Source: Octopus sinensis (lineage: Eukaryota). From it: DNA of 39,218 nucleotides. The notes beneath the pieces are model-generated. The model made no database searches. It was not told the DNA's origin and saw nothing but the letters and a program-made list of their open reading frames with translations. The stretch lies in assembly GCF_006345805.1 (NCBI RefSeq), contig NW_021835518.1, positions 1 through 39,218 of the forward strand. The letters run 5' to 3'. Each line of letters starts with the position of its first letter. Position 1 is the first letter of the stretch. A program made the position numbers and the translations under genes. Of this stretch, positions 1,593 to 32,831 are shown piece after piece.

Positions 1593-2396
1593 TACAAAGT
1601 AGAGGAACCACGATGTAACCCACTATGGTGTGGTAAACTTTCAAACCCTAGACTAGATTGCGAATTCAGCTCTCCACCCCTTAAAAGCCACCATTTACGG
1701 AATGAGGATAACAACGTAGCTTTCGCGCCCGTGCAACCGCCAGTCTATCGCGTGTGGTGGGTGGATCTTCAAGTTGCCGCACGCATTCTTAGTAGCTTTG
1801 AGTAGGCTCGAATTAAACATTATCCTTTGTTGCTAATGGCGTGAGTCCTGATTGGAAGAAGAAGACAACAGCATAAGCTGATGTCAGTATTTCTATATGA
1901 GCGCTCGACCTGCACAAATTGCTAGCCAAATCTCGTTTAAATCACACATCCTACTGCTTTGAAAATGAAGAGACCATGCATTGTGCAATGTAATCCACGG
2001 TGTAGTAAAACAGCCATGGTCAAAACTGCAGCCCGAGAGAATTCCTGAATGGTACATCTAACGAACAATTATCTTGAATTTGTTTAAACTGATGATGAGC
2101 CATCATCCGGCCCGTTTTGCAAAAAGAAGGTTACCCATTCTTCTAATAAAAGAACGGGATGTTCATGACTGGAACGTTTATGATTATAAACCTGCTCGTT
2201 CAGAACCCACCAAGGGGCAAACAACAATAAGAACGACAACACCCATGACCACATCTTCAACACTACAGCTGCCACCTTGCCACAACGCAACGGCCTGTAT
2301 CACCACTAAACCACAGAACAGATAGTAACAGTACCGCTAATATAGTGTTTATCTTGTACACCACTACACACTAGTAACAGCACCAGCATCACCACA

Positions 2397-2397
<1 letters not shown>

Positions 2398-2446
<49 letters not shown>
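2398..2446. repeat. (CTA)n microsatellite
   Basis: Direct reading. Confidence 0.95.
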
Positions 2447-2448
<2 letters not shown>

Positions 2449-2711
2449 ATCCCTATCACTTCATAGCTACTACGTGTAATAATGTGCTCCATACCTACGG
2501 AATTACTACGCAGCTATCACTATCAGTACCACGTCACAGCACAGCTACCACCAATACTACAATTGTTGCGGAACAGCCACCATCCCAACTACTACCACAA
2601 ACACCACCACCATCACAAATATCGTTTATTACATCTTTTATGGATTGTTTGAAGCTAACTTTCTTCCTACACCTCGATCCTTAAATCTCATATATATACA
2701 TATATATATAA

Positions 2712-2750
<39 letters not shown>

Positions 2751-2843
2751 CGTGTATGTATGTATATCAATGGTACAGCACACTTAATTCTAGTTTGAGC
2801 TGTACGGGCTCGATTCTCTGCTATGTACATAGACTCATATATA

Positions 2844-2880
2844 CGAGGTAGTGTTGAAAAGTTCCTGGCTTTAAAACATG
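2844..2880 (+). mobile_element. Solo mariner-type terminal inverted repeat
   Basis: TA|CGAGGTAGTGTTGAAAAGTTCCTGGCT resembles the mariner end at 11472-11500 (revcomp CGAGGTGGTATCAAAACGTTTCCAGACT). No partner end found. Confidence 0.55.
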
Positions 2881-3253
2881 CATGAACTTGAAAGAGTACA
2901 ACATGATTCATTCTAATCACAGAACACCTCGCAGAAGAGCTCACCAAAAACTTAGAATCAGTTATAAATGTGTTGGAACTGCGTCGAAAGAATAAAACCG
3001 AGACAAAAATTCAACAGATAATACTGAATACAATATGATCGTACCATCATACAACTTTACGAATTACTTGCAAGGTTGAGAAAACAAATCCTGCCATAGT
3101 TTGGAGTTAACCATCGGCTTTAAACTTTGCTTACAAATCGTGGCTGTAGGAATATCTCTGAAATATATAATTTCGCAGCTATTCCATACTGAAGAACTGC
3201 ATATAATTCTGTCTTCTCAGATCTTTCCAATTAATAAGATTTACTTACCGCAA

Positions 3254-3897
3254 AAGGCGGCGAACTGGCAGAATCGCTAACACGCCAGCAAAAATTCTTA
3301 CCGTAATTTCGTCCGTCTTCGTGTTCTGAGTTCAAATTCCGCCGAGGTCGTCTTTGCCTTTTATTCTTTCAGGTCGATAAAATAGGTACCAGTTGAGTAA
3401 TGGAGTAGATGTAATCGACCAGCCTATTCCGTAAAATTACAGGCCTTGTACCAAAATTTGAAACCCTTAAGACAACGAGCAGGCAGAATTGTTAATATGC
3501 CGGGCAAAATATTTAGCAGAATTTTGTCCGTCTTCATGTTCTAAGTTTAAATTCTGCCGAGGTCGTCTTTGCTTTCCATCTTTCTGAGTCAATAAAATAA
3601 GTACCAGTTGAGTACCGAGGTCGATGTAATCGACCAGCCTCTTCCGTAAAATTGCTGGCCTTGTACCAAAATTTGAAACCATTTAGACGGAGAGCTAGCA
3701 GAATCTTTAGCACGCCGGGCAAAATGCTTCGCAGCATTTCGTACGTCTTTCTGTATTGAATTCAGATTCCGCTGAGGTGGACTTTGCTTTCATCCTTTCA
3801 GGGTCGATAAAATAAGTATCAGTTGTACCCTGGGGTCCATATAATCAATTTAGACCATCTCCCGGACTTGTTGGCTTTGGACCCAAATTTGAAATCA
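3254..3897 (+). mobile_element. Head-to-tail trimer of SINE family B (~214 bp each: 3254-3466, 3467-3680, 3681-3897)
   Basis: Each unit has a GGCGG(C)GAGCTGGCAGAATC-like head, a GTTCAAAT-like B-box, a central TTTGCCTTTCATCCTTTC-GGTCGATAAAATAAGTACCAG box, and ends in AAATTTGAAA(C/T)C. Monomeric copies lie at 32832-33045 and 35967-36180. Confidence 0.9.
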
Positions 3898-4261
3898 ACA
3901 TTAACTTGCCCTTTAAATAACTCACATATATAGCACACAGGCGCACTTAGATATTAGCTATAATAGATTTATGGAGATATTATATGTTCCTGTCAAAAAT
4001 ATATCAACACTATTTTCTCGTTCACTCAGAAACTATTTCACAAGTGTATATTCAAAAAAAAAAAAAAAAAAATTGACATGAAAACGATGTTTGCACTTAA
4101 CGAGAGCAAAATAACAGTTTGCTTTTGTCTGTTGGTCATGTGATATAACGTCAGCTCTTGTCTATTGTCACATGATACCGTGTGTTGAATCCCGAATGTA
4201 TTTCTCTCGCTTAGTGCTTCTCTTTCCTTACTCGTCTCTCTGTCTTAGTCCGTTTGTGTGT

Positions 4262-4270
4262 TTCTCTCGC

Positions 4271-4311
<41 letters not shown>

Positions 4312-5075
4312 CCATCTCTAAATCCCCTCTCTGTCTTTCTCTATCCTTCTCTCTGTCTCTCTCTCTATCCTTCTCTCTGTCTGTCTCTCTCTATCCTTCT
4401 CTCTGTCTCTCTCTCTATCCTTCTCTCTGTCTGTCTCTCTCTATCCTTCTCTCTGTCTCTCTCTATCCTTCTCTCTGTCTCTCTCTATCCTTCTCTCTGT
4501 CTCTCTCTCTATCCTTCTCTCTGTCTCTCTCTCTATCCTCTCTGTCTTTCTCTATCCTTCTCTCTGTCTCTCTCTCTTTCCTTCTCTCTGTTTCTCTCTC
4601 TATCCTTCTCTCTGTCTCTCTCTATCCTTCTCTCTGTCTCTCTCTATCCTTCTCTCTGTCTCTCTCTATCCTTCTCTCTGTCTCTCTCTCTATCCTTCTC
4701 TTTGTCTCTCTCTATCCTTCTCTTTGTCTCTCTCTATCCTTCTCTCTGTCTCTCTCTATCCTTCTCTCTGTCTCTCTCTATCCTTCTCTTTGTCTCTCTC
4801 TATCCTTCTCTCTGTCTCTCTCTATACTTCTCTCTGTTTCTCTCTCTATCCTTCTTTCTGTCTCTCTCTCTTTCATTCTCTTTGTCTCTCTCTATCCTTC
4901 TCTCTGTCTCTCTCTATCCTTCTCTCTGTCTCTCTCTATCCTTCTCTTTGTCTCTCTCTATCCTTCTCTCTGTCTCTCTCTATCCTTCTCTCTGTCTCTC
5001 TCTCTATCCTTCTCTCTGTCTCTCTCTATCCTTCTCTCTGTCTCTCTCTTCCCCTCTCTCTCACCGTCTCTCCTG
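4262..5075. repeat. Polypyrimidine minisatellite, unit ~20-24 bp (ATCCTTCTCTCTGT(CT)n), preceded by (CT)n
   Basis: About 30-35 copies read directly; it explains the LSLS ORFs at 4254-5129. Confidence 0.95.
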
Positions 5076-5221
5076 ATTTCCATTTTGTCTCTATCTGCGT
5101 TTCATTTACTAAATCAACCTGATGGCTAACATTATTTATCTGAAATGTAAGGCAAAAAAAATAGGTTGAAAGGCAGATAAGATTCATGAAAGAAGTTCCC
5201 TCAAGAAAAAAGACGTACCAC

Positions 5222-5311
<90 letters not shown>

Positions 5312-5327
5312 ACATACATACATACAT

Positions 5328-5366
<39 letters not shown>

Positions 5367-5406
5367 CACCCCACACACATACACACACACACATACACAC
5401 ACACAC

Positions 5407-5445
<39 letters not shown>

Positions 5446-5458
5446 TATATATATATAC
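5222..5458. repeat. Compound microsatellite (TATC)n-(TACA)n-(CA)n-(TA)n
   Basis: Direct reading. Confidence 0.95.
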
Positions 5459-6369
5459 ATCTTGAAGTAGTTTCCAAAAGACTTCTAACGTTGATTCTTC
5501 ATACTTTACTTTGGATTTACTGGTGTAAAATGGTGTAGATATGAAAAATTATATAAGCATATTAAGTATATGATATAAGTTACAGAACGAAGTTCGACAA
5601 ATTCAATCATGTTTTTCATAAATGGAGATTAGATGTTAATATGGGATAAAACATTTATTGAATTCGCCAGACGATCATTTCGTACAGAAAGACAATAAAT
5701 TCATTTTTTCGAATCTGAGTTGTCAAAGAGTCTAATCAATTGCACAATAAGAATGGATTAGAACTTAATAAAGAAAAAGGTGGATTTTAGGGTTACATTA
5801 ATATTTTGTTCTTACTAATTTTTAATGTCTTATTGTTCTAGACGTCATGTCTATTTAAAACACGACTAACGGGTAACGGTTTGGTGATAATATATATAAC
5901 ATAGAAATATAAGTAACTTTTTCTCTATAGATTAGTGTAAATGAGCTAGTTTTAAACTCCATATAAGCAGTAAGAAGCGAGAGGGGTTGGAAATCCAAAT
6001 AAGGGAGTACAGGAAACTGAAATTTATATTTGACCGTTAATAATCATTTCGGCTTTTTTATAAACTAGAAAAATGTTTAAGAGCCCTCGTAAATGGTTAG
6101 TGGTATATAAACTTTATAGTAGAATGTTTATGTAAATGATATGTCAGAAATATAGAAGATAATTTACAGAAAATAGTTAAAGCAGTAAAAATTAGATACT
6201 AATGGACGGTTAATACGACAATATAAGAAAAGTATAAAAATTATAAGGATAATAAATGAATATATGGACATATCTGTACACTCGCATATATGAATATCTT
6301 TATGCGCGTGTATGAGTACATATATATATATATTCATATACACGCATGCATGTATGTATAAGTATACAC

Positions 6370-6429
<60 letters not shown>

Positions 6430-7042
6430 TATATAAATTTATCCTTTTGTTATAATCTTCTTAATAATCCTTTGATTAACCCTAAATTTTAATTATATAC
6501 AATTAGAGCAATATTGTTTAAAATATATAACTATAGTACTACATGATAAGATTATTCCCTGTTACATTATCAATGGTCTACTAGTGACTGCCCCCTTAAT
6601 TGTCAGCTAACATCTTGATTTAAGTTTTCCTTTACCAAACCTCATGATTTTTATGACTATATCACTATGATTTTTGTCTGTTCCCTCAGCCCTACATTTA
6701 ACAGACTCTGCCCCTTGTTCTCTCAGCCTTAGATATGAAAGGATTTGATAAAACTATCTATAAATTAAAACTGACCCCATAAAAATAAACAGTGACAAGC
6801 AAAAATCTATAACAAGTCTTTCTTCCTGTTAAGGCAACATGTTCTTTGTCTATCTCCCTAACTTCTTGGAGATTTTAGGTAAAATTATACTTATGTGCCC
6901 ATCTGTTTTAATTTAATTAAATCCTATGTCTTTGTGCAGCTGAAGATTGCTCTGCATTTAAATTAATGTAATGATTGCATTGTTCAATTAAATGGTGCTG
7001 TGTGAAACGATCGTACTGATTTACGTCTGGATATACTTGTTG

Positions 7043-7092
<50 letters not shown>

Positions 7093-7794
7093 AGCTAGAC
7101 ATAGCCTGAGCCTACTGGTCGAAACCTAGCTAAGTTGTATGTATGTTACACACACACGCACATACACACACACACGCACATACACACACACACACGCATA
7201 CACACACACACGCACATACACACACACACACACCACACACACACGTCAGAAGTTTAAATATATCTAAAAATAATCATCAATCTCTCTTTTAGGTTCAGCA
7301 GTATAAGGTGATTTATGAACTTTCAACAGGTTTTGATATGATAGATAGACAGCTTTACTGACAGATTGTTACATACAAGCTGAGGTGTGTGTATATGTGT
7401 GGGGACAGGTTGCGCTTATCCACGTATATACACGCGCATTCGCATACGTTTACACATAAACACTGACGTATATTATTGGAGATGGAAGTTTCAATACCCT
7501 CAATGGTATTCATCGTGGGTGTATAAATATAGTTATGTATTTACTTACATGCATGAACGCGTAAAGGCTTCTATATGCGTAATGTATACATACTCACACG
7601 CATACACGCACGTATACACAAACATACGGTCACACACAGACACACGCACACAAATGTATATCTGTGTATATATCTATATAGAGGAGTGATAGCTTAAGAG
7701 ATGCATATATAGACAGCCATATAGAATAGACAAAAGTCCATTGGAATTATAGATACGTAGCTAGTAATAGTTAGATCTATATACACGTATATTG

Positions 7795-7795
7795 G

Positions 7796-7842
<47 letters not shown>

Positions 7843-7912
7843 CATGTATGCTGGTATATGTATATATATATGTATATGTATATACATACATATATATATA
7901 CATATGTATGTA

Positions 7913-7961
<49 letters not shown>

Positions 7962-7964
7962 CTA

Positions 7965-8039
<75 letters not shown>

Positions 8040-8042
8040 TGT
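7795..8042. repeat. (TA)n-rich microsatellite
   Basis: Direct reading. Similar tracts at ~6371-6435, 7046-7090, 8620-8980, 10090-10347, 12470-12557, 13590-13885, 22523-22561, 29320-29480. Confidence 0.95.
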
Positions 8043-8761
8043 AGCTTGAGAAAGAGAGTGTATGAGAAAGACAGACAGAGTGGGAGATGGCCACCATCGC
8101 TGATGTGTAGACAACTCGAAGGTATTATATTGCGCCGTAGTAATGAGTGTGGAAACATGAAAATTACTTGCACGGTGACTAAATCAATGGCGGATCTTAA
8201 AACCTTGTCAGAGAAGCCATCTTGTTATGCTTCGTTATTAGATTTTCTTGAACTGAAATGAAAATGAAATGACTCAGAAAATTGCGTAAACAAATAATTG
8301 TCTTTTCTTGGCATATTCCTATCTCTTTCTTTCTGTCTTTCTTCTCTCCCCGCTCTCTTTCCATCGCTCTTTCTGTCTCTTTCCCTTTGTATATGTATAT
8401 GTATATATATATATGATGAATTTATATGTTTGTTTGTGTGTGCGTATGTGTTTCTATGTATGTATATGAATGTCTTTATGTTTGTCTATACATATTTCTA
8501 TCAAGCCACTCTCCTACTCTCTCAATATATCTGTCTCTCAGTGATTCTCTCTATCGCTAAGTGTATCCTTCTCTTACTCCCACTCTTTCTATCTGATCTC
8601 TCTGTGTCTATCCTTCTATATATATGTGCGTGTGTGTATATATATATATATATTTCAAATATATATACATACATTTATACACACAAACACACATACATAC
8701 ATATATACATATATGAATATACTCACATACATGTATGTATATGTATATATATAAATATGTA

Positions 8762-8806
<45 letters not shown>

Positions 8807-8848
8807 GTATGTATATATATATTTGTATATGTATATATAGTATATATG

Positions 8849-8891
<43 letters not shown>

Positions 8892-8897
8892 ACACAC

Positions 8898-8928
<31 letters not shown>

Positions 8929-9677
8929 AATATATATATATACAATATATATATACATATATATATAACATATATATATGTGTGTGAGTGTGTATATGTA
9001 TGTTGTCCGTGCGCTCAAATGTCTGTCTATCTATCTAGATATCTGTGTATATATATCTATGTTCATATGAACACACACACATACAAATTTATTTGTCCGT
9101 CTGTAACGATATTTACTCTCCACAATTCTTCGTACAGCTCTGTTATTATCCATTCTCCTCATTCTTTTCCTCTCTTCTCTTCTCTTCTCTTCTCTCATCC
9201 CTCTTTCATTCTTTCTTTCTTCCTTTCTTTCTTTCTCCTCCTCCTCCTCCTCCTCCTCTTCCTTCCCGCCATTTCTCTTTCGTTTCACACTTCCCAGCTC
9301 GCTCCTCTACTTACCTTTCTTCTGAGTCAACCAACCCCCCACATCATCGTCTTACTTCCTTTCCTTCTCAAACCACCTTCTACTCCTCCCTCTGACCATC
9401 CCTTCCTCCCCTTCCTCCTACCACTACCATATTCCTCCATTACATTTCGCTTCTCCCTCAATTCTTAATACCTTAAATATCATTCTTATAGTTTTCGCAT
9501 TCTGGAAATTTCTTCGTCATACATTTATTTACAAGTAATTTCTCTTTCTCTCCATATATATATATATATTCAATTTAATTCCTATAATCACACCCTCTCT
9601 TACTCACACATTCACGCTTACCACACGCGTGGGCGCGAGGACATACACACACACTGTCATATACGCTCGCACACGCA

Positions 9678-9698
9678 CATGCTCAGAGAAATATCCAC

Positions 9699-9771
<73 letters not shown>

Positions 9772-9790
9772 AGTCTGTCTGTCTGTCTGT

Positions 9791-9864
<74 letters not shown>

Positions 9865-9980
9865 GTCTGTCTGTTTTTCTATGTATCTATCTATCTATCT
9901 GTCTGACTGTCTGTCTATTTATCTCTCTCTCTCTCTATCTACCTAGTACCCTCTCTCTCTCTCTTTCTCTCTCTCTCTCT
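9678..9980. repeat. (CTAT)n/(CTGT)n (GATA/GACA) compound repeat
   Basis: Direct reading. Similar blocks at ~12073-12400 and ~28332-28680. Confidence 0.95.
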
Positions 9981-10286
9981 AAATGTGTTTATGTACACAC
10001 AATATATACACTCTATACACACACGTTATGCATATATGTATAAGTAATTACTTTTGCATGTATGAATGTACTTGGATTTGATCGTACATATATATACATA
10101 CATATATGTATATACCTATATATATATGTGTATATATATATACACATAAACATATACATAGATATGTATATACATATATACATGCATACGTATATATATA
10201 TATGTACATAACATATATATATATACATACAAACCATACATACATACATACGCACACACATACACACACACACCACACACACACCA

Positions 10287-10350
<64 letters not shown>

Positions 10351-10729
10351 ACAAGTGAGATCCTCAGATTCTCAGTATAGAAAACACTTAGTAGTGCTCA
10401 AAAATTTCAAACATAGACTCCGATGTTTTTACTGGGGAACAATTCGACAAGGTAAAGAATGTTTATAAGAGGATCACTTTGGGCATATATAGGGGCAAAT
10501 TATGCGGATAAACAAATTAGATCTATTAAATGTAATAGTTTGGGTATGAAATAAAGAAAATACATGCAAGATATATGTATACATGCAAAACGAAAGTGAG
10601 CAAAAATACAGAGACTTTCTGACGATGAATATTTAAGTATATTATATATGTAGATATGTATGTAAATAAATCCAGCTTACACTATGTACAAACGAATGGT
10701 ACATTTGGAGACATATGAAATAGGATTCT

Positions 10730-11500
10730 CTATTTGAAATAAAGTCGCTTTCCGTAAGCGAGTCGAGGACCTTCTGCGCTTCACTCTGGATCTCGATAAC
10801 GCTGTTAAAACGGTGATCTCTGAGCAGCATTTTCAATTTGGGGATGTGATGGAAGTCCCCATGTGCTACCAAATCTGGCGAATATGCTGGGTGTGGTAGC
10901 GATACTGTGTTCTTTTTGGCGAGAAACTCCTGAGTGAGGAGAGCTCAATGACAGGTGCATCGTCACCGTGAAGAATTTAATTCGTCGTGCTTCACAGATC
11001 CGGTGGCTTTCGTCAAATGTGCTCCCCCAACTGCTTCAAAAAGTCCTCTGACGATCCTCATACACAATCTGATGAATTTTCTCAACATTTCAGAGTGTGA
11101 AGCTCGTGGCAAATCTACCAGATTGTTCAGCATCTGCCAGGGACGTTCTTCCGAATTTGAAGCCCTCGTGTCACTCGAAACATTGTGTCCGACCCATTGC
11201 CTCTTCATCGTAAGCTTGCTGAAGTAAGCTCAATGTCTCTGTTGCAGACTTCCCATGTTTAGCCTTAAATTTAACGTTGGCTCTCTATTCCACCTTCCAG
11301 ACCATGACAAAAATCGCGAGATTACACCATCACTTGGTCACAAGAACACAAATTTCACAACTTACGCAGTAAACACAGCAATGTCACTGGGCACACTACT
11401 TCATGAAGGTCACTGTTAGCTCTCACTGCGTACTTAACAGTGTGCTGCCATCTGTTGGCTTGCTACATAACTAGTCTGGAAACGTTTTGATACCACCTCG
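10730..11500 (-). mobile_element. Internally deleted, decayed mariner (DD34D-type) element
   Basis: 5' TIR at 11472-11500 followed by TA. The minus strand reads an N-terminal HTH-like region (..ENVEKIHQIVYEDRQRT) fused directly to LKQLGEHI*RKPPDL*STTN*ILHGDDAP, then FLAKKNTVSLPHPAYSPDLVAHGDFHHIPKLK. These match the mariner HDNA and YSPDL motifs, with stops and frameshifts. No 3' TIR seen. Confidence 0.9.
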
Positions 11501-14065: not shown

Positions 14066-17000
14066 TTTAACCATTCTATAAACTCAGCAAAAAGAGACAT
14101 TAATTCTATGCTGGATACTCTAGTTTGCATACCAAAAATTTTTAACCGCTCTATTAACTCTGTATATACTCAACATACACAGGGGTTAATTATGTGCTAG
14201 AGTCCCTAATTTGCATACCGAAAATGTTTAAACCACTCTATAAACTCAACGAAGACAGAAATTAATTCTGTGCTGGAGTCCTTAATTTGCATACCGTAAA
14301 TTTTTAAACGCTCAATTAACTCTATATATACTCAACATATACACGAGTTAATTCTGTGCTGGAGTCCCTAATTTGCATATCGAAAATTTTTAACCGCTCA
14401 ATTAGCTCTATATATACTCAACATATACAGAAGTTAATTCTGTGCTGGAGTCCCTAATTTGCATACCGAAAATTTTTAACCACTCTATAAACTCAACAAA
14501 AACAATTTAATTCTAAGCTGGAGTCCCTAATTTGCATACCGAAAATTTTTAACCGCTCAATTAACTCTATATATACTCAACATATACACAAGTTAATTCT
14601 GTGCTGGAGTCCCTAATTTGCATACCGAAAATTTTTAACCGCTCAAATAACTCTATATATACTCAACATATACACAAGTTGATTCTGTGCTGGAGTCCCT
14701 AATTTGCATAGCGAAAATTTTTAACCACTCTATAAACTCAACAAAAACAATTTATTTCTATCTTGGAGTCCCTAATTTGCATACCTAAAATTTTTAACCG
14801 CTCATATAACTCTATATATACTCAACATATACAGAAGTTATTTCTGTGCTGGAGTCCATAATTTGCATACCGAAAATTTTTACCACTCTATGAACTCAAC
14901 AAAAAGAAAAATTAATTCTGTGCCGGAGTCCCTAATTTGCATACCGAAATTTTTTAAACGCTCATTTAACTCTATATATACTCAACATATACAGAAGTTC
15001 ATTCTGTGCTGGAGTCCCTAATTTGCATACCGAAAATAGTTAACCGCTCAATTAACTCTATATATACTCAACATATTCAGAAGTTAATTCGATGCTGGAG
15101 TCCCTAATTTGCATACCGATAATTTTTAACCGCTCAATTAACTCTATATATACTCAACATATTCAGAAGTTAATTCTATGCTGGAGTCCCAAATTTGCAT
15201 GCCGAAAATTTTTAACCGTTCCATTAACTCTATATATACTCAACATACACATTAGGTAATTCTATGCTGGAGTCCCTAATTTCCATACCGAAAATTTATA
15301 CCACTCTATAAACTCAACAAAATGAGAAATTAATTCTGTGCAGGAGTCCCTAATTTGCATATCCAAATTTTTTAAACGCTCTGTGAACTCTATATATGCT
15401 CAACATATTCAGAAGTTTATTCTATCCTGGAGTCTCTAATTTGCATACCGAAAATTTTTAACCGCTCAATTAACTCTATATATACTCAACATATACAGAA
15501 GTTATTCTGTGCCGGAGTCCCTAATTTGCATACCGAAATTTTTTAAACGCTCATTTAACCCTATATATACTCAACATATACAGAAGTTAATTCTGTGCTG
15601 GAGTCCCTAATTTGCATACCGAAAATTGTTAATCGTTCAATTAACTCTATATATACTCAACATATACAGCATTTAATTCTATGCTGGAGTCCCTAATTTG
15701 CATACCGAAAATTTTTACCTCTATATAAACTCAACACAAAGAGAATTTTAGTTCTATGCTGGAGACCCTAATTTGCATACAGAAATTTTTAACCGCTCAA
15801 TTAACTCAATATATACTCAACATATTCAGAAGTTAATTCTGTGCTGGAGTCCCTAATTTGCATACCGAAAAATTTTACTCGCTTAATTAACTCTATATAT
15901 ACTCAACATATACGGAAGTTAATTCTGTGCTGGAGTCCTTAATTTGCATACCGAAAATTTTTAACTGTTCTGTTAACTCTATATATACTCAACATATTCA
16001 GAAGTTAATTCTATGCTGGAATCCCTAATTTGCATACCGAAAATTTTTAACCGCTCAATGAACTCTATATATACTCAACATATTCAGAATTTAATTCTGT
16101 GCTGGAGTCCCTAATTTGCATACCAAAAATTTTTAACCGCTCAATTAACTCTATATATACTCAACATATTCAGAATTTAATTTTATGCTGGAGTCCCAAA
16201 TTTGCATACCGAAAATTTTTAACCGTTCCATTAACTCTATATATACTCAACATATACAGAAGTTAATTCTGAGCTGGAGTCCTTAATTTGCATACCGAAA
16301 ATTTTTAACCGCTCTGTTAACTCTATATATAATCAACATATTCAGAAGTTAATTCTATGCTGGAGTCCCTAATTTGCATACTGAAAATTTTTAACCGCTC
16401 AATTAACTCTATATATACTCAACATATTCAGAATTTAATTCTGTGCTGGAGTCCCTAATTTGCATACCAAAAATTTTTAACCGCTCAATTAACTCTATAT
16501 ATACTCAACATATTCAGAATTTAATTTTATGCTGGAGACCCAAATTTGCATACCGCTCATATAACTCTATATATACTCAACATATACAGAAGTTATTTCT
16601 GTGCTGGAGTCCCTAATTTGCATACCGAAAATTTTTACCACTCAATAAACTTAACAAAAAGAAAAATTAATTCTGTGCCGGAGTCCCTAATTTGCATACC
16701 GAAATTTTTTAAAATCTCATTTAACTCTATATATACTCAACATATTCAGAAGTTAATTCGATGCTGGAGTCCCTAATTTGCATACCGAAAATTTTTAACC
16801 GCTCAATTAACTCAATATATACTGAACATATTCAGAAGTTAATTCTGTGCTGGAGTCCCTAATTTGCATACCGAAAAATTTTACTCGCTTAATTAACTCT
16901 ATATATACTCAACATATACAGAAGTTAATTCTGTGCTGGAGTCCTTAATTTGCCTACCGAAAATTTTTAACCGCTCTGTTAACTCTATATATACTCAACA

Positions 17001-20000
17001 TATTCAGAATTTAATTCTATGCTGGAGTCCCTAATTTGCATACCGAAAATTTTTAACCGCTCAATGAACTCTATATATACACAACATATTCAGAATTTAA
17101 TTTTGTGCTGGAGTCCCTAATTTGCATACCAAAAATTTTTAACCGCTCAATTAACTCTATATATACTCAACATATTCATTAGTTAATTCTATGCTAAAGT
17201 CCCAAATTTGCATACAGAAAATTTTTAACCGTTCCATTAACTCTCTATATACTCAACATATACATTAGGTAATTCAATGCTGGAGTCCCTAATTTGCATA
17301 CCGAAAATTTTTACCACTCTATAAACTCAACAAAAAGAGAAATTAATTCTGTGCAGGGGTCCCTAATTTGCATATCGAAATTTTTTACACGCTCTGTGAA
17401 CTCTATATATGCTCAACATATTCAGAAGTTTATTCTATCCTGGAGTCTCTAATTTGCATACCGAAAATTTTTAACCGCTCAATTAACTCTATATATACTC
17501 AACATATACAGAAGTTATTTCTGTGACGGAGTCCCTAATTTGCATACCGAAATTTTTTAAACGCTCATTTAACTCTATATATACTCAACATATACAGAAG
17601 TTTATTTTGTGCTGGAGTCCCTAATTTGCATACCGAAAATTGTTAACCGCTCAATTAACTCTATATATACTCAACATATTCAGAAGTTAATTCGATGCTG
17701 GAGTCCCTAATTTGCATACCGAAAATATTTAACCGCACATTTAACTCTATATATACTCAAAATATTCAGAAGTTAATTCTATTCTGGAGTCCCAAATTTG
17801 CATACCGAAAATTTTTAACCGTTCCATTAACTCTATATATACTCAACATATACATTAGGTAATTCTATGCTGGAGTCCCAAATTTGCATACCGAAAATTT
17901 TTACCACTCTATAAACTCAACAAAAAGAGAAATTAATTCTGTACAGGGGTCCCTAATTTGCATATCGAAATTTTTTAAACGCTCTGTGAAATCTATATAT
18001 GCTCAACATATTCAGAAGTTTATTCTATCCTGGAGTCTCTAATTTGCATACCGAAAATTTTTAACCGCTCAATTAACTCTATATATACTCAACATATACA
18101 GAAGTTATTTCTGTGCCGGAGTCCCTAATTTGCATACCTAAATTTTTTAAACGCTCATTTAACCCAATATATACTCAACATATACAGCATTTAATTCTAT
18201 GCTGGAGTCCCTAATTTGCATACCGAAAATTTTTAACTCTCTATAAACTGAACACAAAGAGAAATTTAGTTCTATGCTGGAGTCCCTAATTTGCATACAG
18301 AAATTTTTAACCGCTCAATTAACTCAATATATACTCAACATATTCAGAAGTTAATTCTGTGCTGGAGTCCCTAATTTGCATACCGAAAAATTTTCCTCGC
18401 TTAATTAACTCTATATATACTCAACATATTCAGAAGTTAATTCTATGCTGGAGTCCCTAATTTGCATACCGAAAATTTTTAACCGCTCAATTAACACTAT
18501 ATATACTCAACATATTCAGAATTTAATTCTGTGCTGAAGTCCCTAATTTGCATACCAAAAATTTTTAACCGCTCAATTAACTCTATACATACTCAACATA
18601 TTCAGAAGTTAATTCGATGCTGGAGTCCCTAATTTGCATACCGAAAATTTTTAACCGCTCAATTAACTCAATATATACTCAACATATTCAGAAGTTAATT
18701 CTGTGCTGGAGTCCCTAATTTGCATACCGAAAAATTTTACTCGGTTAATTAACTCTATATATACTCAACATATACAGAAGTTAATTCTGTGCTGGAGTCC
18801 TTAATTTGCATACCGAAAATTTTTAACCGCTGTGTTAACTCTATATATACTCAACATATTCAGAAGTTAATTCTCTGCTGGAGTCCCTAATTTGCATACC
18901 AAAAATTTTTAACCGCTCAATTAACTCTATATATACTCAACATATTCAGAATTTAATTTTATGCTGGAGTCACAAATTTGCATACCGAAAATTTTTAACC
19001 GTTCCATTAACTCTATATATACTCAACATATACAGAATTTAATTCTGTGCTGGAGTCCCTAATTTGCATACCAAAAATTTTTAACCGCTCAATTAACTCT
19101 ATATATACTCAACATATTCAGAATTTAATTTTATGCTGGAGTCCCAAATTTGCATACCGAAAATTTTTAAGCGTTCCATTAACTCTATATATACTCAACA
19201 TATACTGAAGTTAATTCTGTGCTGGAGTCATTAATTTGCATACCGAAAATTTTTAACCGCTCTGTTAACTCTATATATAATCAACATATTCAGAAGTTAA
19301 TTCTATGCTGGAGTCCCTAATTTGCATACCGAAAATTTTTAACCGCTCAATTAACTCTATATATACTGAACATATTCAGAAATTAATTCTGTGCAGGAGT
19401 CCCTAATTTGCATATCGAAATTTTTTAAAACGCTCTGTGAACTCTATATATGCTCAACATATTCAGAAGTTTATTCTATCCTGGAGTCTCTAATTTGCAT
19501 ACCGAAAATTTTTAACCGCTCAATTAACTCTATATATACTCAACATATACAGAAGTTAATTCTGTGCCGGAGTCCCTAATTTGCATACCGAAAATTGTTA
19601 ACCGCTCAATTAACTCTATATATACTCAACATATATAGAAGTTAATTCTGTGCTGGAGTCCCAAATTTGCATACCGAAAATTTTTAACCGCTCAATTAAC
19701 TCTATATATACTCAACATATTCAGAAGTTAATTCGATGCTGGAGTCCCTAATTTGCATACCGAAAATTTTTAACCGCTCAATTAACTCTATATATACTCA
19801 ACATATTCAGAAGTTAATTCTATGCTGGAGTCCCAAATTTGTATACAGAAATTTTTAACCGTTCCATTAACTCTATATATACTCAACATATGCATTAGGT
19901 TATTCTATGCTGGAGTCCTTATTTGCATACCGAAAATTTTTACCACTCTATAAACTCAACAAAAAGAGAAATTAATTCTGTGCAGGAGTCCCTAATTTGC

Positions 20001-22410
20001 ATATCGAAATTTTTTAAACGCTCTGTGAACTCTATATATGCTCAACATATTCAGAAGTTTATTCTATCCTGGAGTCTCTAAGTTGCATATCGAAAATTTT
20101 AACCGCTCAATTAACTCTATATATACTCAACATATACAGAAGTTATTTCTGTGCCGGAGTCCCTAATTTGCATACCGAAATTTTTTAAACGCTCATTTAA
20201 CCCTATATATACTCAACATATACAGAAGTTAATTCTGTGCTGGAGTCCCTAATTTGCATACGGAAAATTGTTAATCGTTCAATTAATTCTATATATTCTC
20301 AACTTATACAGCATTTAATTCTATGCTGGAGTCCCTAATTTGCATACCGAAAATTTTTACCTCTCTATAAACTCAACACAAAGAAATTTAGTTCTATGCT
20401 GGAGTCCCTAATTTTCATACAGAAATTTTTAACCGCTCAATTAACTCTATATATACTCAACATATTCAGAAGTTAATTCTGTGCTGGAGTCCTTAATTTG
20501 CATACCTAAAATTTTTAACCGCTCTGTTAACTCTATATATACTCAACATATTCAGAAGTTAATTCTATGCTGGAGTCCCTAATTTGCATACCGAAAATTT
20601 TTAACCGCTCCTTTAACTCTATATATACTCAACATATTCAGAATTTAATTCTGTGCTGGAGTCCCTAATTTGCATACCAAAAATTTTTAACCGCTCAATT
20701 AACTCTATATATACTCAACATATTCAGAATTTAATTTTATGCTGGAGTCCCAAATTTGCATACCGAAAATTTTTAACCGTTCCATTAACTCTATATATAC
20801 TGAACATATACATTAGTTAATTCTATGCTGGAGTCCCTAATTTGCATACCGAAAATTTTTACCACTCTATAAACTCAACAAAAAGATAAATTAATTCTGT
20901 GCAGGAGTCCCTAATTTGCATATCGAAATTTTTTAAACGCTCTGTGAACTCTATATATACTCAACATATTCAGAAGTTAATTCTGTGCTGGAGTCCCTAA
21001 TTTGCATGCCGAAAAATTTTAACCGCTCAATTAACTCTATATATACTCAACATATACAGAAGTTAATTCTGTGCTGGAGTCCCTAATTTGCATGCCAAAA
21101 ATTGTTAATCGTTCAATTAACTCTATATATACTCAACATATACAGCATTTAATTCTATGCTGGAGTCCCTAATTTGCATACCGAAAATTTTTACCTCTCT
21201 ATAAACTCAACACAAAGAGAAATTTAGTTCTATGGTGCAGTCCCTAATTTGCATACAGAAATTTTTAACCGCTCTATTAACTCTATATATACTCAACATA
21301 TTCAGAAGTTAATTCTGTGCTGGAGTCCCTAATTTGCATACCGAAAAATTTTACCCGCCTCATTTACTCTATATATACTCAACATATACAGAAGTTAATT
21401 CTGTGCTGGAGTCCTTAATTTGCATACCGAAAATTTTTAACCGCTCTGTTAACTCTATATATACTCAACATATTCAGAAGTTAATTCTATGCTGGAGTCC
21501 CTAATTTGCATACCGAAAATTTTTAACCGGTCTGTTAACTCTATATATCCTCAACATATACAGAAGTTAATTCTGTGCTGGAGTCCCTAATTTGCATACC
21601 GAAAATTTTTAACCGTTCAATTTACTCTATATATAGTCAACATATACAGCAGTTAATTCTATGCTGGAGTCCTTAATTTGCATACCGAAAATTTTTAACC
21701 GCTCTGGTAACTCTATATATACTCAACATATACAGAAGTTAATTCTATGCTGGAGTCCCTAATTTGCATACCGAAAATTTTTAACACTCTATAAACTCAA
21801 CAAAAAGAGAAATTTAGTTCTATGCTGGAGTCCCTAATTTGCATACAGAAATTTTTAACTGCTCAATTAACTCTATATATACTAAACATATACAGTAGTT
21901 AATTCTATGCCGGAGTTCCTAATTTGCATACCGAAAATTTTTAACCGCTCAATTAACTCTATATATACTCAACATATTCAGAAGTTAATTTTGTGCTGCA
22001 GTCCCTAATTTGCATACCGAAAATTTTTAACCGCTCTTTTAACTCTATATATACTCAAAATATAAAGAAGTTAATTCTGTACTGGAGTCCCTAATTTGCA
22101 TACCGAAAATTGTTAACCGCTCAATTAACACTATATATACTCAACATATACAGAAGTTAATTCTGTGCTGGATCCCTATATTCAAATTATATATATGCAA
22201 ACTATATATATACTCAACAAATACATCAGTTATTCTATGCAGGAGTCCCTAATTTGCATACCGAAGATGCTTAACACTTTATAAACTGTTTAAATACTCA
22301 ACAAATGCAGCTGTTATTCTATGCAGGATTCCTTAATTTGCATACCGAAAATGTTTAACCGCTCTATAAATTATATATTTCCTCAAGAAATATAGCAGTT
22401 ATTCTATGCT
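14066..22410. repeat. Satellite array, ~95-100 monomers: 86-bp long unit with interspersed 73-75-bp short unit
   Basis: Consensus AATTCTGTGCTGGAGTCCCTAATTTGCATACCGAAAATTTTTAACCGCTCAATTAACTCTATATATACTCAACATATTCAGAAGTT. GGAGTCC anchors at 14361, 14447, 14520, 14606, 14692, 14765 give steps of 86/73/86/86/73. Both edges are degenerate. Confidence 0.97.
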
Positions 22411-24621: not shown

Positions 24622-25612
24622 TGTTTATTTATCGCAGATTCATTTAAAATAGTGCTTAAAAAAAATACTAATACCCTTGATAAACGAGGACAGATATGAT
24701 AAATTATGTAGCTTCAAATAAGATTGGCTGCTGATCCTAGCATATCGAACGAATTGTAGATTCCAGATATCACACAACGTCATTTATCTGACACAACGAT
24801 CTACATCGGATATAATCATGAAACTACAACGCAAAATCGTTAGCAGCGCCATCTGAACTTCAGAACACTGACTACAGTAGACGAACAGAATTCAATATTG
24901 AGAGAGAAATATAGAAAAATATCGGTATATAGACGGCAACTTTAACTTTTCTACTGCTTCGCTATTTTTGTTTATATTAGATATTAAGACGATATAAGTT
25001 AATATTTATGTTAAGCTAAGTAAATAATAATGTTGTAATCAGAGATATCTGTCGGCCATGTTATTTTTTTTTTGTATGTCTTTTAACAGTCTTCAAATTG
25101 AAGATCGATAATACAGTGACTGAGTGTCAGGTGAGTATTGGCGTGATGTCTCTGTGTGTGTACGTGTGTACATATGTGTGTGTGTGTGTGTGTGTGAGGT
25201 GTATAACACTGGGGACGACTATTTAGTTGTCTGATGTGTATTGCAAAAATGTCAGTGTGTGTGTGTGTGTTTATATATATATATATATATTATATAATAT
25301 ATATATATATATGTATATGTGTCTGTATATGTATATATATATATATGGTGTGTATATATATATATATGTATGTATTTGCGTGTGTGTGTATGTGTATATA
25401 TATATATTTATATGTATTAGCGCGTGTGTGTATGTGAGGGTGTATATGTGTGTGTTATACATATGCATGTGTATATATGTGTTTGAGTGTGTGGAAAATA
25501 TTACTGAGGACTAAACCGTCTAGTTCTCTTGTGTACACTGGTGTGATATTAGCGCGCGCGCGAGTATATGTATGTGCGTCTACGCGCGAACGTGTGTGTG
25601 TGTGTGCGTGCA

Positions 25613-28200
25613 TGTGCCGACAAAGATCAAAGACGGTGCCGACAGAGATCAAAGACGGTGCCGACAGAGATCAAAGACGGTGCCAACAGAGATCAAAGAC
25701 GGTGCCCACAGAGATCAAAGACGATGCCCACATAGATCAAAGACGCTGCCGACATAGATCAAAGAGTGTGCCGACAGAGATCAAAGACGGTGTCGACAGA
25801 GATCAAAGAGTGTGCCGACAAAGATCAAAGACGGTGCCGACATAGATCAAAGATGGTGCCGACATGAATCAAAGAGTGTGCCGACATGAATCACAGAGTG
25901 TGCCGACAAAGATCAAAGACGGTGCCTACAGAGATAAAAGACGGTGCCGACAGAGATCAAAGACGGTGCCGACAGAGATCAAAGAGTGTGCCGAAAAAGA
26001 TCAAAGAGTGTGCCGATAAAGATCAAAGACGGTGCCGTCAAACCGGTTCAAACCGGTTCAAACCGGATCAAATAAGAGATCCAAGACGGTGCCGATAGAG
26101 ATCAAAGACGGTGCCGACATATATCAAAGACGGTGCCGACAGAGATCAAAGACGGTGTCGACAGAGATCAAAGACGGTGCCGACAGAGATCAAAGACGGT
26201 GCCGCCAGAGATCAAAGACAGTGCCGACAGAGATCAAAGAGTGTGCCGACAAAGATCAAAGAATGTGCCGACAAAGATCAAAGAGTGTGCCGACAAAGAT
26301 CAAAGACGGTGCCGACAGAGATCAAAGACGGTGCCGACAGAGATCAAAGACGGTGCCGACAGAGATCAAAGATGGTGCCGACAGAGATCAAAGACGGTGC
26401 CGACAGAGATCAAAGACGGTGCCAACAGAGATCAAAGACGGTGCCGGCAGAGATCAAAGATGGTGCCGACAGAGATCAAAGACGGTGCCGCTAGAGATCA
26501 AAGACGGTGCCGACAGAGATCAAAGAGTGTGCCGACAAAGATCAAAGAGTGTGCCGACAAAGATCAAAGACGGTGTCGACAGAGATCAAAGACGGTGCCG
26601 ACAGAGATCAAAGACTGTGCCGACAAAGATCAAAGACGGTGCCGACAGAGATCAAAGATGGTGCCGACATGAATCAAAGAGTGTGCCGACAAAGATCAAA
26701 GACGGTGCCGACAGAGATAAAAGACGGTGCCGACAGAGATCAAAGACGGTGCCGACAGAGATCAAAGACGGTGCCAGCAGAGATCAAAGAGTGTGCCGAC
26801 AAAGATCAAAGAGTGTGCCGATAAAGATCAAAGACGGTGCCGTCAAACCGGTTCAAACCGGTTCAAACCGGATCAAATAGAGATCAAAGACGGTGCCGAC
26901 AGAGATCAAAGACAGTGCCGACAGAGATCAAAGAGTGTGCCGACAAAGATCAAAGAATGTGCCGACAAAGATCAAAGAGTGTGCCGACAAAGATCAAAGA
27001 CGGTGCCGACAGAGATCAAAGACGGTGCCGACAGAGGTCAGAAGACCGGTGCCGACAGAGATCAAGATGTGCCGACAGAGAGATCAAAGACGGTGCCGAC
27101 AGAGATCAAAGACGGTGCCAACAGAGATCAAAGACGGTGCCGGCAGAGATCAAAGATGGTGCCGACAGAGATCAAAGACGGTGCCGCTAGAGATCAAAGA
27201 CGGTGCCGACAGAGATCAAAGAGTGTGCCGACAAAGATCAAAGAGTGTGCCGACAAAGATCAAAGACGGTGCCGACAGAGATCAAAGACGGTGCCGACAG
27301 AGATCAAAGAGTGTGCCGACAAAGATCAAAGACGGTGCCGACAGAGATCAAAGATGGTGCCGACATGAATCAAAGAGTGTGCCGACAAAGATCAAAGACG
27401 GTGCCGACAGAGATAAAAGACGGTGCCGACAGAGATCAAAGACGGTGCCGACAGAGATCAAAGACGGTGCCAGCAGAGATCAAAGAGTGTGCCGACAAAG
27501 ATCAAAGAGTGTGCCGATAAAGATCAAAGACGGTGCCGTCAAACGGTTCAAACCGGTTCAAACCGGATCAAATAGAGATCAAAGACGGTGCCGACAGAGA
27601 TCAAAGACGGTGCCGACATAGATCAAAGAGGGGTGCCAACAGAGATCAAAGACGGTGCCGACAGAGATCAAAGATGGTGCCGACAGAGATCAAAGACGGT
27701 GCCGCTAGAGATCAAAGACGGTTGCCGACAGAGATCAAAGAGTGTGCCGACAAAGATCAAAGAGTGTGCCGACAAAGATCAAAGACGGTGCCGACCCAGA
27801 GCAGAGATCAACGACGGTGCCGACATAGATCAAAGACGGTGCCGACAGAGATCAAAGACGGTGCCGACAGAGATCAAAGACGGTGTCGACAGAGATCAAA
27901 GACGGTGCCGACAGAGATCAAAGACGGTGCTGATAGAGATCAAAGAGTGTGCCGAAAAAAATCAAAGACGGTGCCGTCAAACCGGTTCAAACCGGTTCAA
28001 ACCGGATCAAACAGAGATCAAAGACGGTGCCGACAGAGATCAAAGACGATGCCGACAGAGATCAAAGACGGTGCCAACAGAGATCAAAGACGCTGCCGAC
28101 ATAGATCAAAGACGGTGCCGACAGAGATCAAAGACGGTGCCGACAAACCGGTTCAAACCGGATCAAACCGGTTCAAACCGGTTCAAACCAGATCAAACAG
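25613..28200. repeat. 22-bp satellite (~105-110 monomers, GCCGACAGAGATCAAAGACGGT; variant GCCGACAAAGATCAAAGAGTGT) punctuated by (AAACCGGTTC)n cassettes
   Basis: Direct reading. The 22-aa periodicity of all + strand ORFs (66 nt = 3 x 22) confirms the period. Cassettes start at ~26041, 26846, 27542, 27980 and 28146. Confidence 0.97.
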
Positions 28201-28331
28201 GTGTGGGTGTGTGTGTGCGCGCGCGAGTGATGTATATTATTGAAAAACCGCACTACCTTGATGTCTGCTGTATATTTAGAGTGATGTCTGAGTGTATTTA
28301 AGTGTGTGTTAGTATGATCTCTGTGTGTAAA

Positions 28332-32652: not shown

Positions 32653-32737
<85 letters not shown>

Positions 32738-32793
32738 TTTCAAATAGCAATAACCACACCTCGGATTTACCTCATTGGCCATGGTACCGCCTC

Positions 32794-32831
<38 letters not shown>

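What the first reader, a model, noticed from the sequence alone, without database searches (positions are those of the whole stretch)
25613..28200. 22-bp satellite reads like a natural TOPflash: ~100 TCF/LEF sites, each beside C-clamp helper-like motifs
Seen: almost every monomer contains AGATCAAAG (minus strand CTTTGATCT). Recurrent monomer variants mostly change the flanks (ACGGT vs AGTGT, AGAG vs AAAG) and usually leave ATCAAAG and GCCG intact; a few break the site (AGATAAAAG, AGATCCAAG). Established: CTTTG(A/T)(A/T), optimally CCTTTGATC, is the TCF/LEF HMG-box site used in multimerised Wnt reporters. Invertebrate TCFs also have a C-clamp that binds a nearby helper site (RCCG; GCCGCCR in Drosophila). 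The monomer places GCCGACA (one mismatch from GCCGCCA; an exact GCCGCCA occurs at 26201) next to the HMG site, and the main variant has a second RCCG on the other strand (ACGGT). A 22-bp period is about two helical turns. Inference: the array could be a Wnt/beta-catenin-responsive mega-enhancer or a TCF sink, switchable by CpG methylation. Caveat: any 22-mer will match some TF motif by chance, and the base 3' of CAAAG is A rather than the optimal G.
Basis: partly seen in the sequence, partly recalled or inferred. Interest (0 to 1): 0.8.

Follow-up and report, generated by a model that had tools for sequence, protein, structure and literature searches.

The report
Octopus 22-bp satellite with TCF-like box
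This is a real, non-coding tandem-repeat (satellite) family of octopus whose 22-bp unit contains a textbook TCF/LEF binding core in almost every copy, but nothing here shows that it acts as a Wnt enhancer or TCF sink.

Summary
Window 25614-28145 holds about 105 head-to-tail 22-bp units (consensus GTGCCGACAGAGATCAAAGACG). There are 95 AGATCAAAG and 100 ATCAAAG sites, all on one strand, against 1.5 expected by chance.

It is a composite satellite. The 22-bp units are interrupted by short blocks of a related 10-bp unit (GWTCAAACCG). A 695-bp (32-unit) higher-order copy has duplicated recently (98.4% identity).

The same family forms a 9.2-kb array at an unrelated locus on Octopus vulgaris chromosome OX597818.1. 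There it was mis-annotated as a hypothetical protein.

- ATCAAAG is the least variable block in both loci, even after allowing for base composition.
- The "helper" part fails. The canonical GCCGCCR/RCCGCC occurs once in 105 units in the window and almost never at the second locus, and GCCG varies as much as other G/C positions.
- The conserved GATCAAA is also the stretch shared with the 10-bp unit, at which the sub-arrays switch. That is a non-regulatory reason for its constancy.
- A neighbouring 86-bp satellite has a perfect POU octamer as its own least variable block.
- The 368 sites in the two arrays compare with about 140,000 chance sites genome-wide, so a sink is unlikely.

Verdict: a new member of an ordinary class. 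Protein binding is untested.

The parts
25614..28145 (+). Array of about 105 22-bp units, consensus GTGCCGACAGAGATCAAAGACG, all in one orientation. The HMG-type core ATCAAAG lies at unit positions 13-19 and GCCG at positions 3-6.
   Evidence: TRF; wrap-around alignment and per-position table; motif counts.
26199..26892 (+). Higher-order repeat, copy 1 (32 units including one 10-bp block).
   Evidence: 98.4% identical to 26893-27587 over 698 aligned columns. The unit-by-unit variant pattern repeats.
26893..27587 (+). Higher-order repeat, copy 2.
26038..26072 (+). Block of the 10-bp unit TCAAACCGGT (3.5 copies) inside the array.
   Evidence: TRF; junction sequences.
26843..26877 (+). Block of the 10-bp unit (3.5 copies).
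   Evidence: TRF.
27539..27572 (+). Block of the 10-bp unit (3.5 copies).
   Evidence: TRF.
27977..28012 (+). Block of the 10-bp unit (3.6 copies).
   Evidence: TRF.
28144..28202 (+). Terminal block of the 10-bp unit (5.9 copies) that closes the array.
   Evidence: TRF; sequence.
25590..25613 (.). Left flank: (GT)n/(GC)n low-complexity DNA abutting the first unit.
   Evidence: Sequence. The only similarity between the two flanks is this low-complexity stretch.
28203..28230 (.). Right flank: (GT)n/(GC)n low-complexity DNA. No target-site duplication and no shared mobile-element end.

Best explanation
This is a non-coding, multi-locus composite satellite (minisatellite-type) family of Octopus. 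A 22-bp unit and a related 10-bp unit (GWTCAAACCG) are interleaved. The arrays grow and homogenise by replication slippage, unequal crossing-over and duplication of multi-unit blocks. This is shown by the tandem structure, the 695-bp higher-order duplication and a second array with unrelated flanks.

The TCF/LEF-type core CTTTGATC is simply part of the unit consensus, so it is copied with every unit. Its low variability is best explained (inferred) by three things together:
- the block is CpG-free and A/T-rich in an array where nearly all change is at G/C and CpG positions;
- GATCAAA is the stretch shared by the 22-bp and 10-bp units, at which the sub-arrays switch. Published satellite work finds such conserved motifs to be obligatory components of the junctions between monomers;
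- concerted evolution.

An HMG-box protein could bind such DNA in vitro. However, nothing here shows binding in vivo, Wnt responsiveness or any effect on a gene.
For: - Tandem structure and one orientation.
- Higher-order copies 98.4% identical, with the variant pattern repeating unit by unit.
- A second array of about 394 units on O. vulgaris OX597818.1 has the identical consensus and the same polymorphic positions 10, 21 and 22. Its flanks are non-orthologous.
- No stray units occur outside the arrays.
- 46% of the window is tandem repeat.
- Substitutions run overwhelmingly from G/C. A/T positions outside the motif (2, 9, 11) are also nearly invariant.
- The 22-mer aligns to a dimer of the 10-mer at 15 of 22 positions; 0.8% of shuffles reach this.
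- 12 of 13 10-to-22 junctions in L001 run through the shared GATCAAA, and the 22-to-10 junctions run through CAAA or CCG.
- Conserved motifs are described as obligatory components of satellite monomer junctions (PMC3694981).
- The canonical helper site is absent.
- The full 11-bp TCF/Pan consensus is met in 0 units here.
Against: - Within each base class the ATCAAAG positions are still about 3-fold less variable than the rest. Distinct haplotypes carrying a change: A/T 1.8 against 5.2, G/C 5.0 against 17.5. Stratified p is about 2e-4.
- The a-priori block is the least variable window in both loci.
- The helper-like GCCGACA sits 0 bp and 4 bp from the 11-bp HMG site. Published work finds helper sites at comparable positions enhance TCF binding (PMC4154663).
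- A second satellite in the window shows the same behaviour with a POU octamer. This may mean such boxes are protein-binding sites rather than accidents.
Confidence: 0.75

Rival explanations
1. The array is a platform bound by TCF or another HMG-box protein. Octopus TCF (or a Sox-type HMG protein; ATCAAAG also fits WWCAAWG) would occupy the roughly 100-400 phased sites. The array would then act as a Wnt-responsive enhancer, a local TF reservoir, or a nucleation site for repression or heterochromatin, as Pax3/Pax9 sites do in mouse major satellite.
For: - CTTTGWWS is present in 95 of 105 units here and 292 times at the second locus.
- ATCAAAG is the least variable block in both loci.
- GCCG-containing helper-like motifs lie 0 and 4 bp from the HMG site (sequence; PMC4154663).
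- Invertebrate TCFs carry a C-clamp (PMC3896468 abstract).
- There is a precedent for TF sites in satellites (PMC3875662).
- The 86-bp neighbour has a conserved octamer box.
Against: - The canonical helper is absent, and GCCG is not conserved above background.
- The position 3' of CAAAG is the suboptimal A in all window units. The optimal G variant exists in L001 but has not spread: 15 SCTTTGWWS against 292 CTTTGWWS.
- Core-breaking variants were amplified. ATCAAGG is in 11 units of L001 and ATAAAAG in 3 units here.
- The 10-bp blocks that co-expand carry ATCAAAC, which lacks the G of the TCF core.
- The 368 sites compare with about 1.4e5 chance sites genome-wide.
- No gene lies in the 39-kb window.
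Confidence: 0.12
2. The array is a tandem repeat carried and dispersed by a mobile element (Helitron/Helentron- or MITE-borne, as in bivalves). The conserved box would be the binding or nicking site of the element's own protein.
For: - At least two loci have unrelated flanks.
- Dispersed short satellite-like arrays carried by Helentrons and MITEs are documented in molluscs (PMC7492417 and PMC3879986, listed).
- The L001 array abuts SINE-like sequence.
Against: - No shared sequence occurs at the array edges of the two loci. The only flank matches are dispersed repeats at different distances and orientations.
- The window array is flanked only by (GT)n/(GC)n.
- The SINE-like piece next to the L001 array is absent from the window.
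Confidence: 0.08
3. The repeat encodes a protein with a 22-residue repeat, as the O. vulgaris annotation implies ('hypothetical predicted protein', P0001).
For: - The consensus has no stop codon in any + frame, so ORFs of up to 282 aa cross the array.
- One such ORF is annotated in O. vulgaris.
- There is a marginal Pfam hit to Bcl-2_BAD, 29.1 bits against a cutoff of 28.2.
Against: - The period of 22 is not a multiple of 3.
- 23-bp, 20-bp and other off-size units shift the frame.
- Common variants create TAG, TAA and TGA (CATAGATC, CGATAAAG, ATGAATC).
- P0001 has no Pfam hit, and the BAD hit is a single compositional stretch.
- In 1.84 billion representative proteins only P0001 is a true relative. 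The other hits decode to units only 13-16 of 22 identical and come from metagenomes, macaque and similar sources.
Confidence: 0.02

Closest known systems
Satellite DNA families with a conserved box and mixed simple/higher-order arrays (for example Meloidogyne satellites with CENP-B-box-like motifs at monomer junctions, PMC3694981; dispersed short arrays in oysters, PMC8268682 and PMC7492417)
   Same: Head-to-tail units, higher-order repeats, several loci, two unit types interleaved, and a short low-variability motif that lies at the junctions between unit types.
   Different: The unit is very short (22 and 10 bp) and the arrays are only 2.5-9 kb. The chromosomal role (centromeric or not) is unknown. 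The box happens to equal a TCF/LEF core rather than a CENP-B-like box. No carrier mobile element was found.
Multimerised TCF reporters (TOPFLASH type) and natural Wnt-response elements with HMG-Helper pairs (PMC4154663, PMC4267635)
   Same: Many copies of AGATCAAAG (CTTTGATC) in one orientation, with a GCCG-containing motif within 0-4 bp.
   Different: - Reporters use 3-16 optimal sites (CCTTTGATC); here the flanking base is the suboptimal T/A.
- The 6-7 bp helper consensus is not met.
- No promoter or gene is nearby.
- No binding or activity data exist.
Transcription-factor sites in satellites used for heterochromatin formation (Pax3/Pax9 sites in mouse major satellite, PMC3875662)
   Same: An intact TF consensus is reiterated in a satellite unit. 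This is a possible repressive or architectural rather than enhancer role.
   Different: In mouse the binding and the loss-of-function phenotype are shown. Here there is only a motif match and low variability.

Membership tests
Bipartite TCF site / Wnt-response element | HMG-domain core 5'-CTTTGWWS-3' (PMC4267635) | tested here: met
   95 matches on the minus strand in the window array and 292 in the L001 array.
Bipartite TCF site / Wnt-response element | Full 11-bp TCF/Pangolin site SCTTTGWWSWW (PMC4154663) | tested here: not met
   0 matches in the window array and 7 in L001. The unit reads TCTTTGATCTC or TCTTTGATCTT, that is 9-10 of 11.
Bipartite TCF site / Wnt-response element | Helper site GCCGCCR (fly) or RCCGCC / GCCGCY (human) next to the HMG site | tested here: not met
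   GCCGCCR: 1 in the window array, 0 in L001. RCCGCC: 1 and 5. The unit has GCCGACA, 6 of 7 with a mismatch at position 5. All seven positions contribute in published mutagenesis.
Bipartite TCF site / Wnt-response element | Helper within a few bp of the HMG site, in an orientation and spacing that aids binding | tested here: inconclusive
   On the minus strand the unit reads CG-[TCTTTGATCTC]-[TGTCGGC]-AC. The reversed helper-like motif is 0 bp downstream (the paper's KK0 layout) and 4 bp upstream (AK-like by my reading; the figure was not available). These are permissive layouts, but the motif itself is not a consensus helper.
Bipartite TCF site / Wnt-response element | Binding by TCF and beta-catenin-dependent activation | not testable with these tools
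   Needs EMSA, CUT&RUN or a reporter assay.
Satellite / minisatellite DNA family | Head-to-tail units in one orientation, homogenised | tested here: met
   105 units; 27 are identical to the consensus; 152 non-consensus cells out of 2310.
Satellite / minisatellite DNA family | Higher-order repeat structure / block duplication | tested here: met
   Blocks of 694-695 bp at 98.4% identity. L001 has identical TRF rows 1407 bp apart.
Satellite / minisatellite DNA family | Same family at more than one locus | tested here: met
   L001 (O. vulgaris OX597818.1, 51.12-51.14 Mb) has the identical consensus and unrelated flanks. Only two loci could be reached.
Satellite / minisatellite DNA family | Non-coding | tested here: met
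   Frame-shifting units and stop-creating variants; no credible protein family; no Rfam family in the array.
Mobile-element-borne tandem repeat (Helentron/MITE type) | Conserved element termini flanking the arrays at different loci | tested here: not met
   No shared edge sequence between the window and L001. Only two loci were compared.

The most novel reading that the evidence does not exclude
Octopus satellites may be built around intact binding sites for developmental transcription factors. Here the least variable block of the 22-bp satellite is a TCF/HMG-box core. The least variable block of the neighbouring 86-bp satellite is a perfect POU octamer. These boxes would be bound in vivo, either as TF-dependent heterochromatin nucleation (as with Pax3/9 in mouse) or as genuine Wnt/POU-responsive arrays.
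Probability: 0.1. Interest if true: 0.65.

Novelty: new member of a known kind. Interest (0 to 1): 0.27.

Why it matters
If the box is only a by-product of repeat dynamics, this is one more uncharacterised satellite in a genome that is about two-thirds repeats. Its practical value is then as a caution: it was annotated as a protein in O. vulgaris, and it will produce large false TCF-motif clusters in motif scans.

If the box is bound, it would be a natural multimerised TCF site in a cephalopod. It would also be a second example, after mouse Pax3/9, of satellites that depend on sequence-specific transcription factors. That is testable with existing octopus chromatin methods.

Tried and rejected
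- **Looking for more copies.** An exact 29-mer scan of JGI metagenome contigs and of IMG/VR viral contigs gave 0 hits each. No eukaryotic genome collection was on hand, so I translated the array and searched protein collections. This gave one true relative, P0001, and through it locus L001.
- **The other 51 hits of the exhaustive protein search.** These looked at first like diverged relatives. P0026, for example, decodes to a unit with GATCAAAC. Decoding all of them gives a continuum of 13-16 of 22 identity with no outlier. Their sources are metagenomes, macaque and others. I treat them as chance 22-residue-periodic ORFs and draw nothing from them.
- **Coding reading.** Rejected.
- **Known RNA family.** None in the array.
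- **Target-site duplication or a shared mobile-element end.** None; the flank similarity is only (GT)n/(GC)n.
- **The octamer control.** I chose the 86-bp satellite's octamer to show that TF motifs in satellites are chance. It did show that such matches are common here. Unexpectedly, the octamer is also that satellite's least variable block, so the control cuts both ways.
- **Literature.** I found no description of this satellite and no natural TCF-site minisatellite.

Full report
**Observation.** The array exists as described. TRF reports a 22-bp period (also 44 and 66) over 25614-28145. A wrap-around alignment to GTGCCGACAGAGATCAAAGACG gives 117 units, of which 105 are true 22-mers. AGATCAAAG occurs 95 times and ATCAAAG 100 times, always on the + strand and only inside the array. 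87 of the 99 spacings are exactly 22 bp. The degenerate site ASWTCAAAG has 97 matches in the window against 1.48 +/- 1.31 in dinucleotide-preserving shuffles.

**Anatomy.**
- The array is composite. Short blocks of a 10-bp unit TCAAACCGGW interrupt it at 26038, 26843, 27539 and 27977, and a block at 28144-28202 closes it.
- It has higher-order structure. Units 27-58 (26199-26892) and 59-90 (26893-27587) carry the same succession of variants and are 98.4% identical. A 32-unit block therefore duplicated recently.
- The 22-mer aligns to a dimer of the 10-mer at 15 of 22 positions, a score reached by 0.8% of shuffles. The two units are probably related.
- The flanks are (GT)n/(GC)n low-complexity DNA with no target-site duplication.
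- No stray units occur elsewhere.
- 46% of the window is tandem repeat, and no credible gene is present.
- The array has 50% G+C against 36% for the window. Its CpG observed/expected ratio is 1.15 against 0.80 outside.

**A second locus.** No animal genome collection was on hand. I used the fact that the unit has no stop codon in any + frame and searched the translated array against predicted proteins.
- One hit, P0001 (E = 2e-53), is a 'hypothetical predicted protein' of Octopus vulgaris.
- Its gene lies in assembly GCA_951406725.2, chromosome OX597818.1, at 51.12-51.14 Mb (locus L001).
- L001 carries a 9.2-kb array (2150-11363) of about 394 units with much longer 10-bp blocks.
- It has the identical 22-bp consensus and the same three polymorphic positions, 10, 21 and 22.
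- Its flanks match the window only through dispersed repeats at other positions and orientations, so it is a different locus.
- An exhaustive HMMER pass over 1.84 billion representative proteins found no other true relative. The weaker hits decode to units only 13-16 of 22 identical and come from unrelated sources.
- The window is therefore from an octopus. The species is not established.

**Testing the TCF reading: the motif.**
- The unit meets the 8-bp Wnt-response core CTTTGWWS (PMC4267635) in 95 units here and 292 in L001.
- It does not meet the 11-bp TCF/Pangolin site SCTTTGWWSWW (PMC4154663), which has 0 matches in the window array and 7 in L001. The first S is a T.
- The variant with the optimal base exists in L001 but has not spread: 15 SCTTTGWWS.
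- The helper claim fails on the published definitions. GCCGCCR occurs once in the window array and never in the L001 array. RCCGCC occurs 1 and 5 times.
- The unit offers GCCGACA. Published serial mutagenesis found that all seven helper positions contribute, the first four most (PMC4154663).
- On the minus strand the unit reads CG-[TCTTTGATCTC]-[TGTCGGC]-AC. The reversed helper-like motif is 0 bp downstream and 4 bp upstream of the 11-bp HMG site. Published work finds layouts of this kind permissive.

**Testing the TCF reading: per-position variability.**

| Position class | Mean number of distinct unit haplotypes carrying a change (both loci pooled) |
|---|---|
| A/T inside ATCAAAG | 1.8 |
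| A/T outside | 5.2 |
| G/C inside ATCAAAG | 5.0 |
| G/C outside, non-CpG | 17.5 |
| CpG positions | 27.3 |

- Base composition explains much of the pattern. Substitutions run mostly from G/C, and positions 2, 9 and 11 outside the motif are also nearly invariant.
- A residual signal remains. ATCAAAG is the least variable of the 22 cyclic 7-bp windows. Drawing 5 A/T and 2 G/C positions at random reaches its sum in about 2e-4 of trials pooled, 0.05 for the window alone and 3.5e-4 for L001 alone.
- These counts are not independent events, because of higher-order amplification and linkage. The contiguity-preserving p value cannot go below 1/22.
- GCCG is no better conserved than other G/C positions (p = 0.20). 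Its CpG G is among the more variable positions.
- Core-breaking variants have been amplified: ATCAAGG in 11 L001 units and ATAAAAG in 3 window units.

**A competing reason for the constant block.**
- GATCAAA is the stretch the 22-bp and 10-bp units have in common.
- 12 of the 13 10-to-22 junctions in L001 pass through it (…CAAACYGG-ATCAAAG-ACGGTGCC…).
- The 22-to-10 junctions pass through CAAA or CCG.
- The 10-bp unit carries ATCAAAC, which lacks the G of the TCF core. Yet it expands together with the 22-bp unit, covering at least 1.5 kb of the 9.2-kb L001 array by a simple pattern match.

**Controls and arithmetic.**
- The neighbouring 86-bp satellite (14100-22410) carries a perfect POU octamer ATTTGCAT in 92 units.
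- The 10-bp unit carries AACCGGTT, which I recall from memory (not checked here) as the Grainyhead consensus. It occurs 10 times here and 55 times in L001.
- Perfect TF consensus sequences in the satellites of this window are therefore the rule, which weakens the significance of any single match.
- Unexpectedly, the octamer is also the least variable 8-bp window of its 86-bp unit: sum 5 against a median of 41, rank 1 of 86. The control therefore also leaves open that such boxes are protein-binding sites.
- For a sink: at 36% G+C a 2.8-Gb genome (size from PMC13282606) is expected to hold about 1.4e5 chance ASWTCAAAG sites. The two arrays hold 95 and 273.
- For a methylation switch: the HMG core has no CpG, both CpGs lie at the most variable positions, and the array is not CpG-depleted.

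**Other readings.**
- Coding is rejected. The period is not a multiple of 3, off-size units shift the frame, common variants create stops, and P0001 has no Pfam hit. The one Pfam hit of the window ORF (Bcl-2_BAD, 29.1 against 28.2 bits) is a compositional artefact.
- No Rfam family matches the array.
- A carrier mobile element is not supported by the two loci. Two loci are few.

**Comparison, novelty and verdict.**
- The object behaves as a satellite family with a conserved box. It is not a member of the bipartite TCF-site class as defined, because the helper and the 11-bp site are not met.
- I found no description of it in the searchable literature.
- It is a new member of a known kind.
The functional inference is unsupported.
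- Interest is modest. The point worth following up cheaply is whether conserved TF-like boxes are general in octopus satellites.

Noticed in passing
window 14100-22410: An 8.3-kb array of about 99 units of an 86-bp satellite. 92 units carry a perfect POU octamer (ATTTGCAT within CCCTAATTTGCATACC). That block is the least variable 8-bp window of the unit: sum of non-consensus 5 against a median of 41, rank 1 of 86.
   Followed up: partly
window 32723-32803 (-): An Rfam U4 spliceosomal RNA match of 49.4 bits (gathering score 46), 81 bases long and partly overlapping a (TAA)n run. It is probably a truncated or degenerate U4 copy.
   Followed up: no
L001 10001-10753 and 1-7468 (O. vulgaris OX597818.1): The O. 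vulgaris annotation calls a 250-aa 'hypothetical predicted protein' entirely inside the satellite array. A second predicted gene spans part of the array. These are probably annotation artefacts of a stop-free repeat.
   Followed up: partly
window 26038-26072 and the other 10-bp blocks; L001 2318-2803, 4350-5003, 7230-7483, 8637-8890: The 10-bp unit GWTCAAACCG contains the 8-bp palindrome AACCGGTT in its T variant. I recall this from memory (not checked here) as the Grainyhead-type consensus. The unit also places an A3 tract every 10 bp, close to the helical repeat, so these blocks may be intrinsically bent. The curvature was not computed.
   Followed up: no
window 3268-3825: 2.6 tandem copies of a 215-bp unit (TRF, 79% matches). 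I suspect it is SINE-derived, but this was not checked.
   Followed up: no
window 4281-5061: A second, unrelated 22-bp-period array (TCTCTCTGTCTCTCTCTATCCT, 34 copies) made of TC-rich low-complexity DNA. It also yields long spurious ORFs.
   Followed up: no
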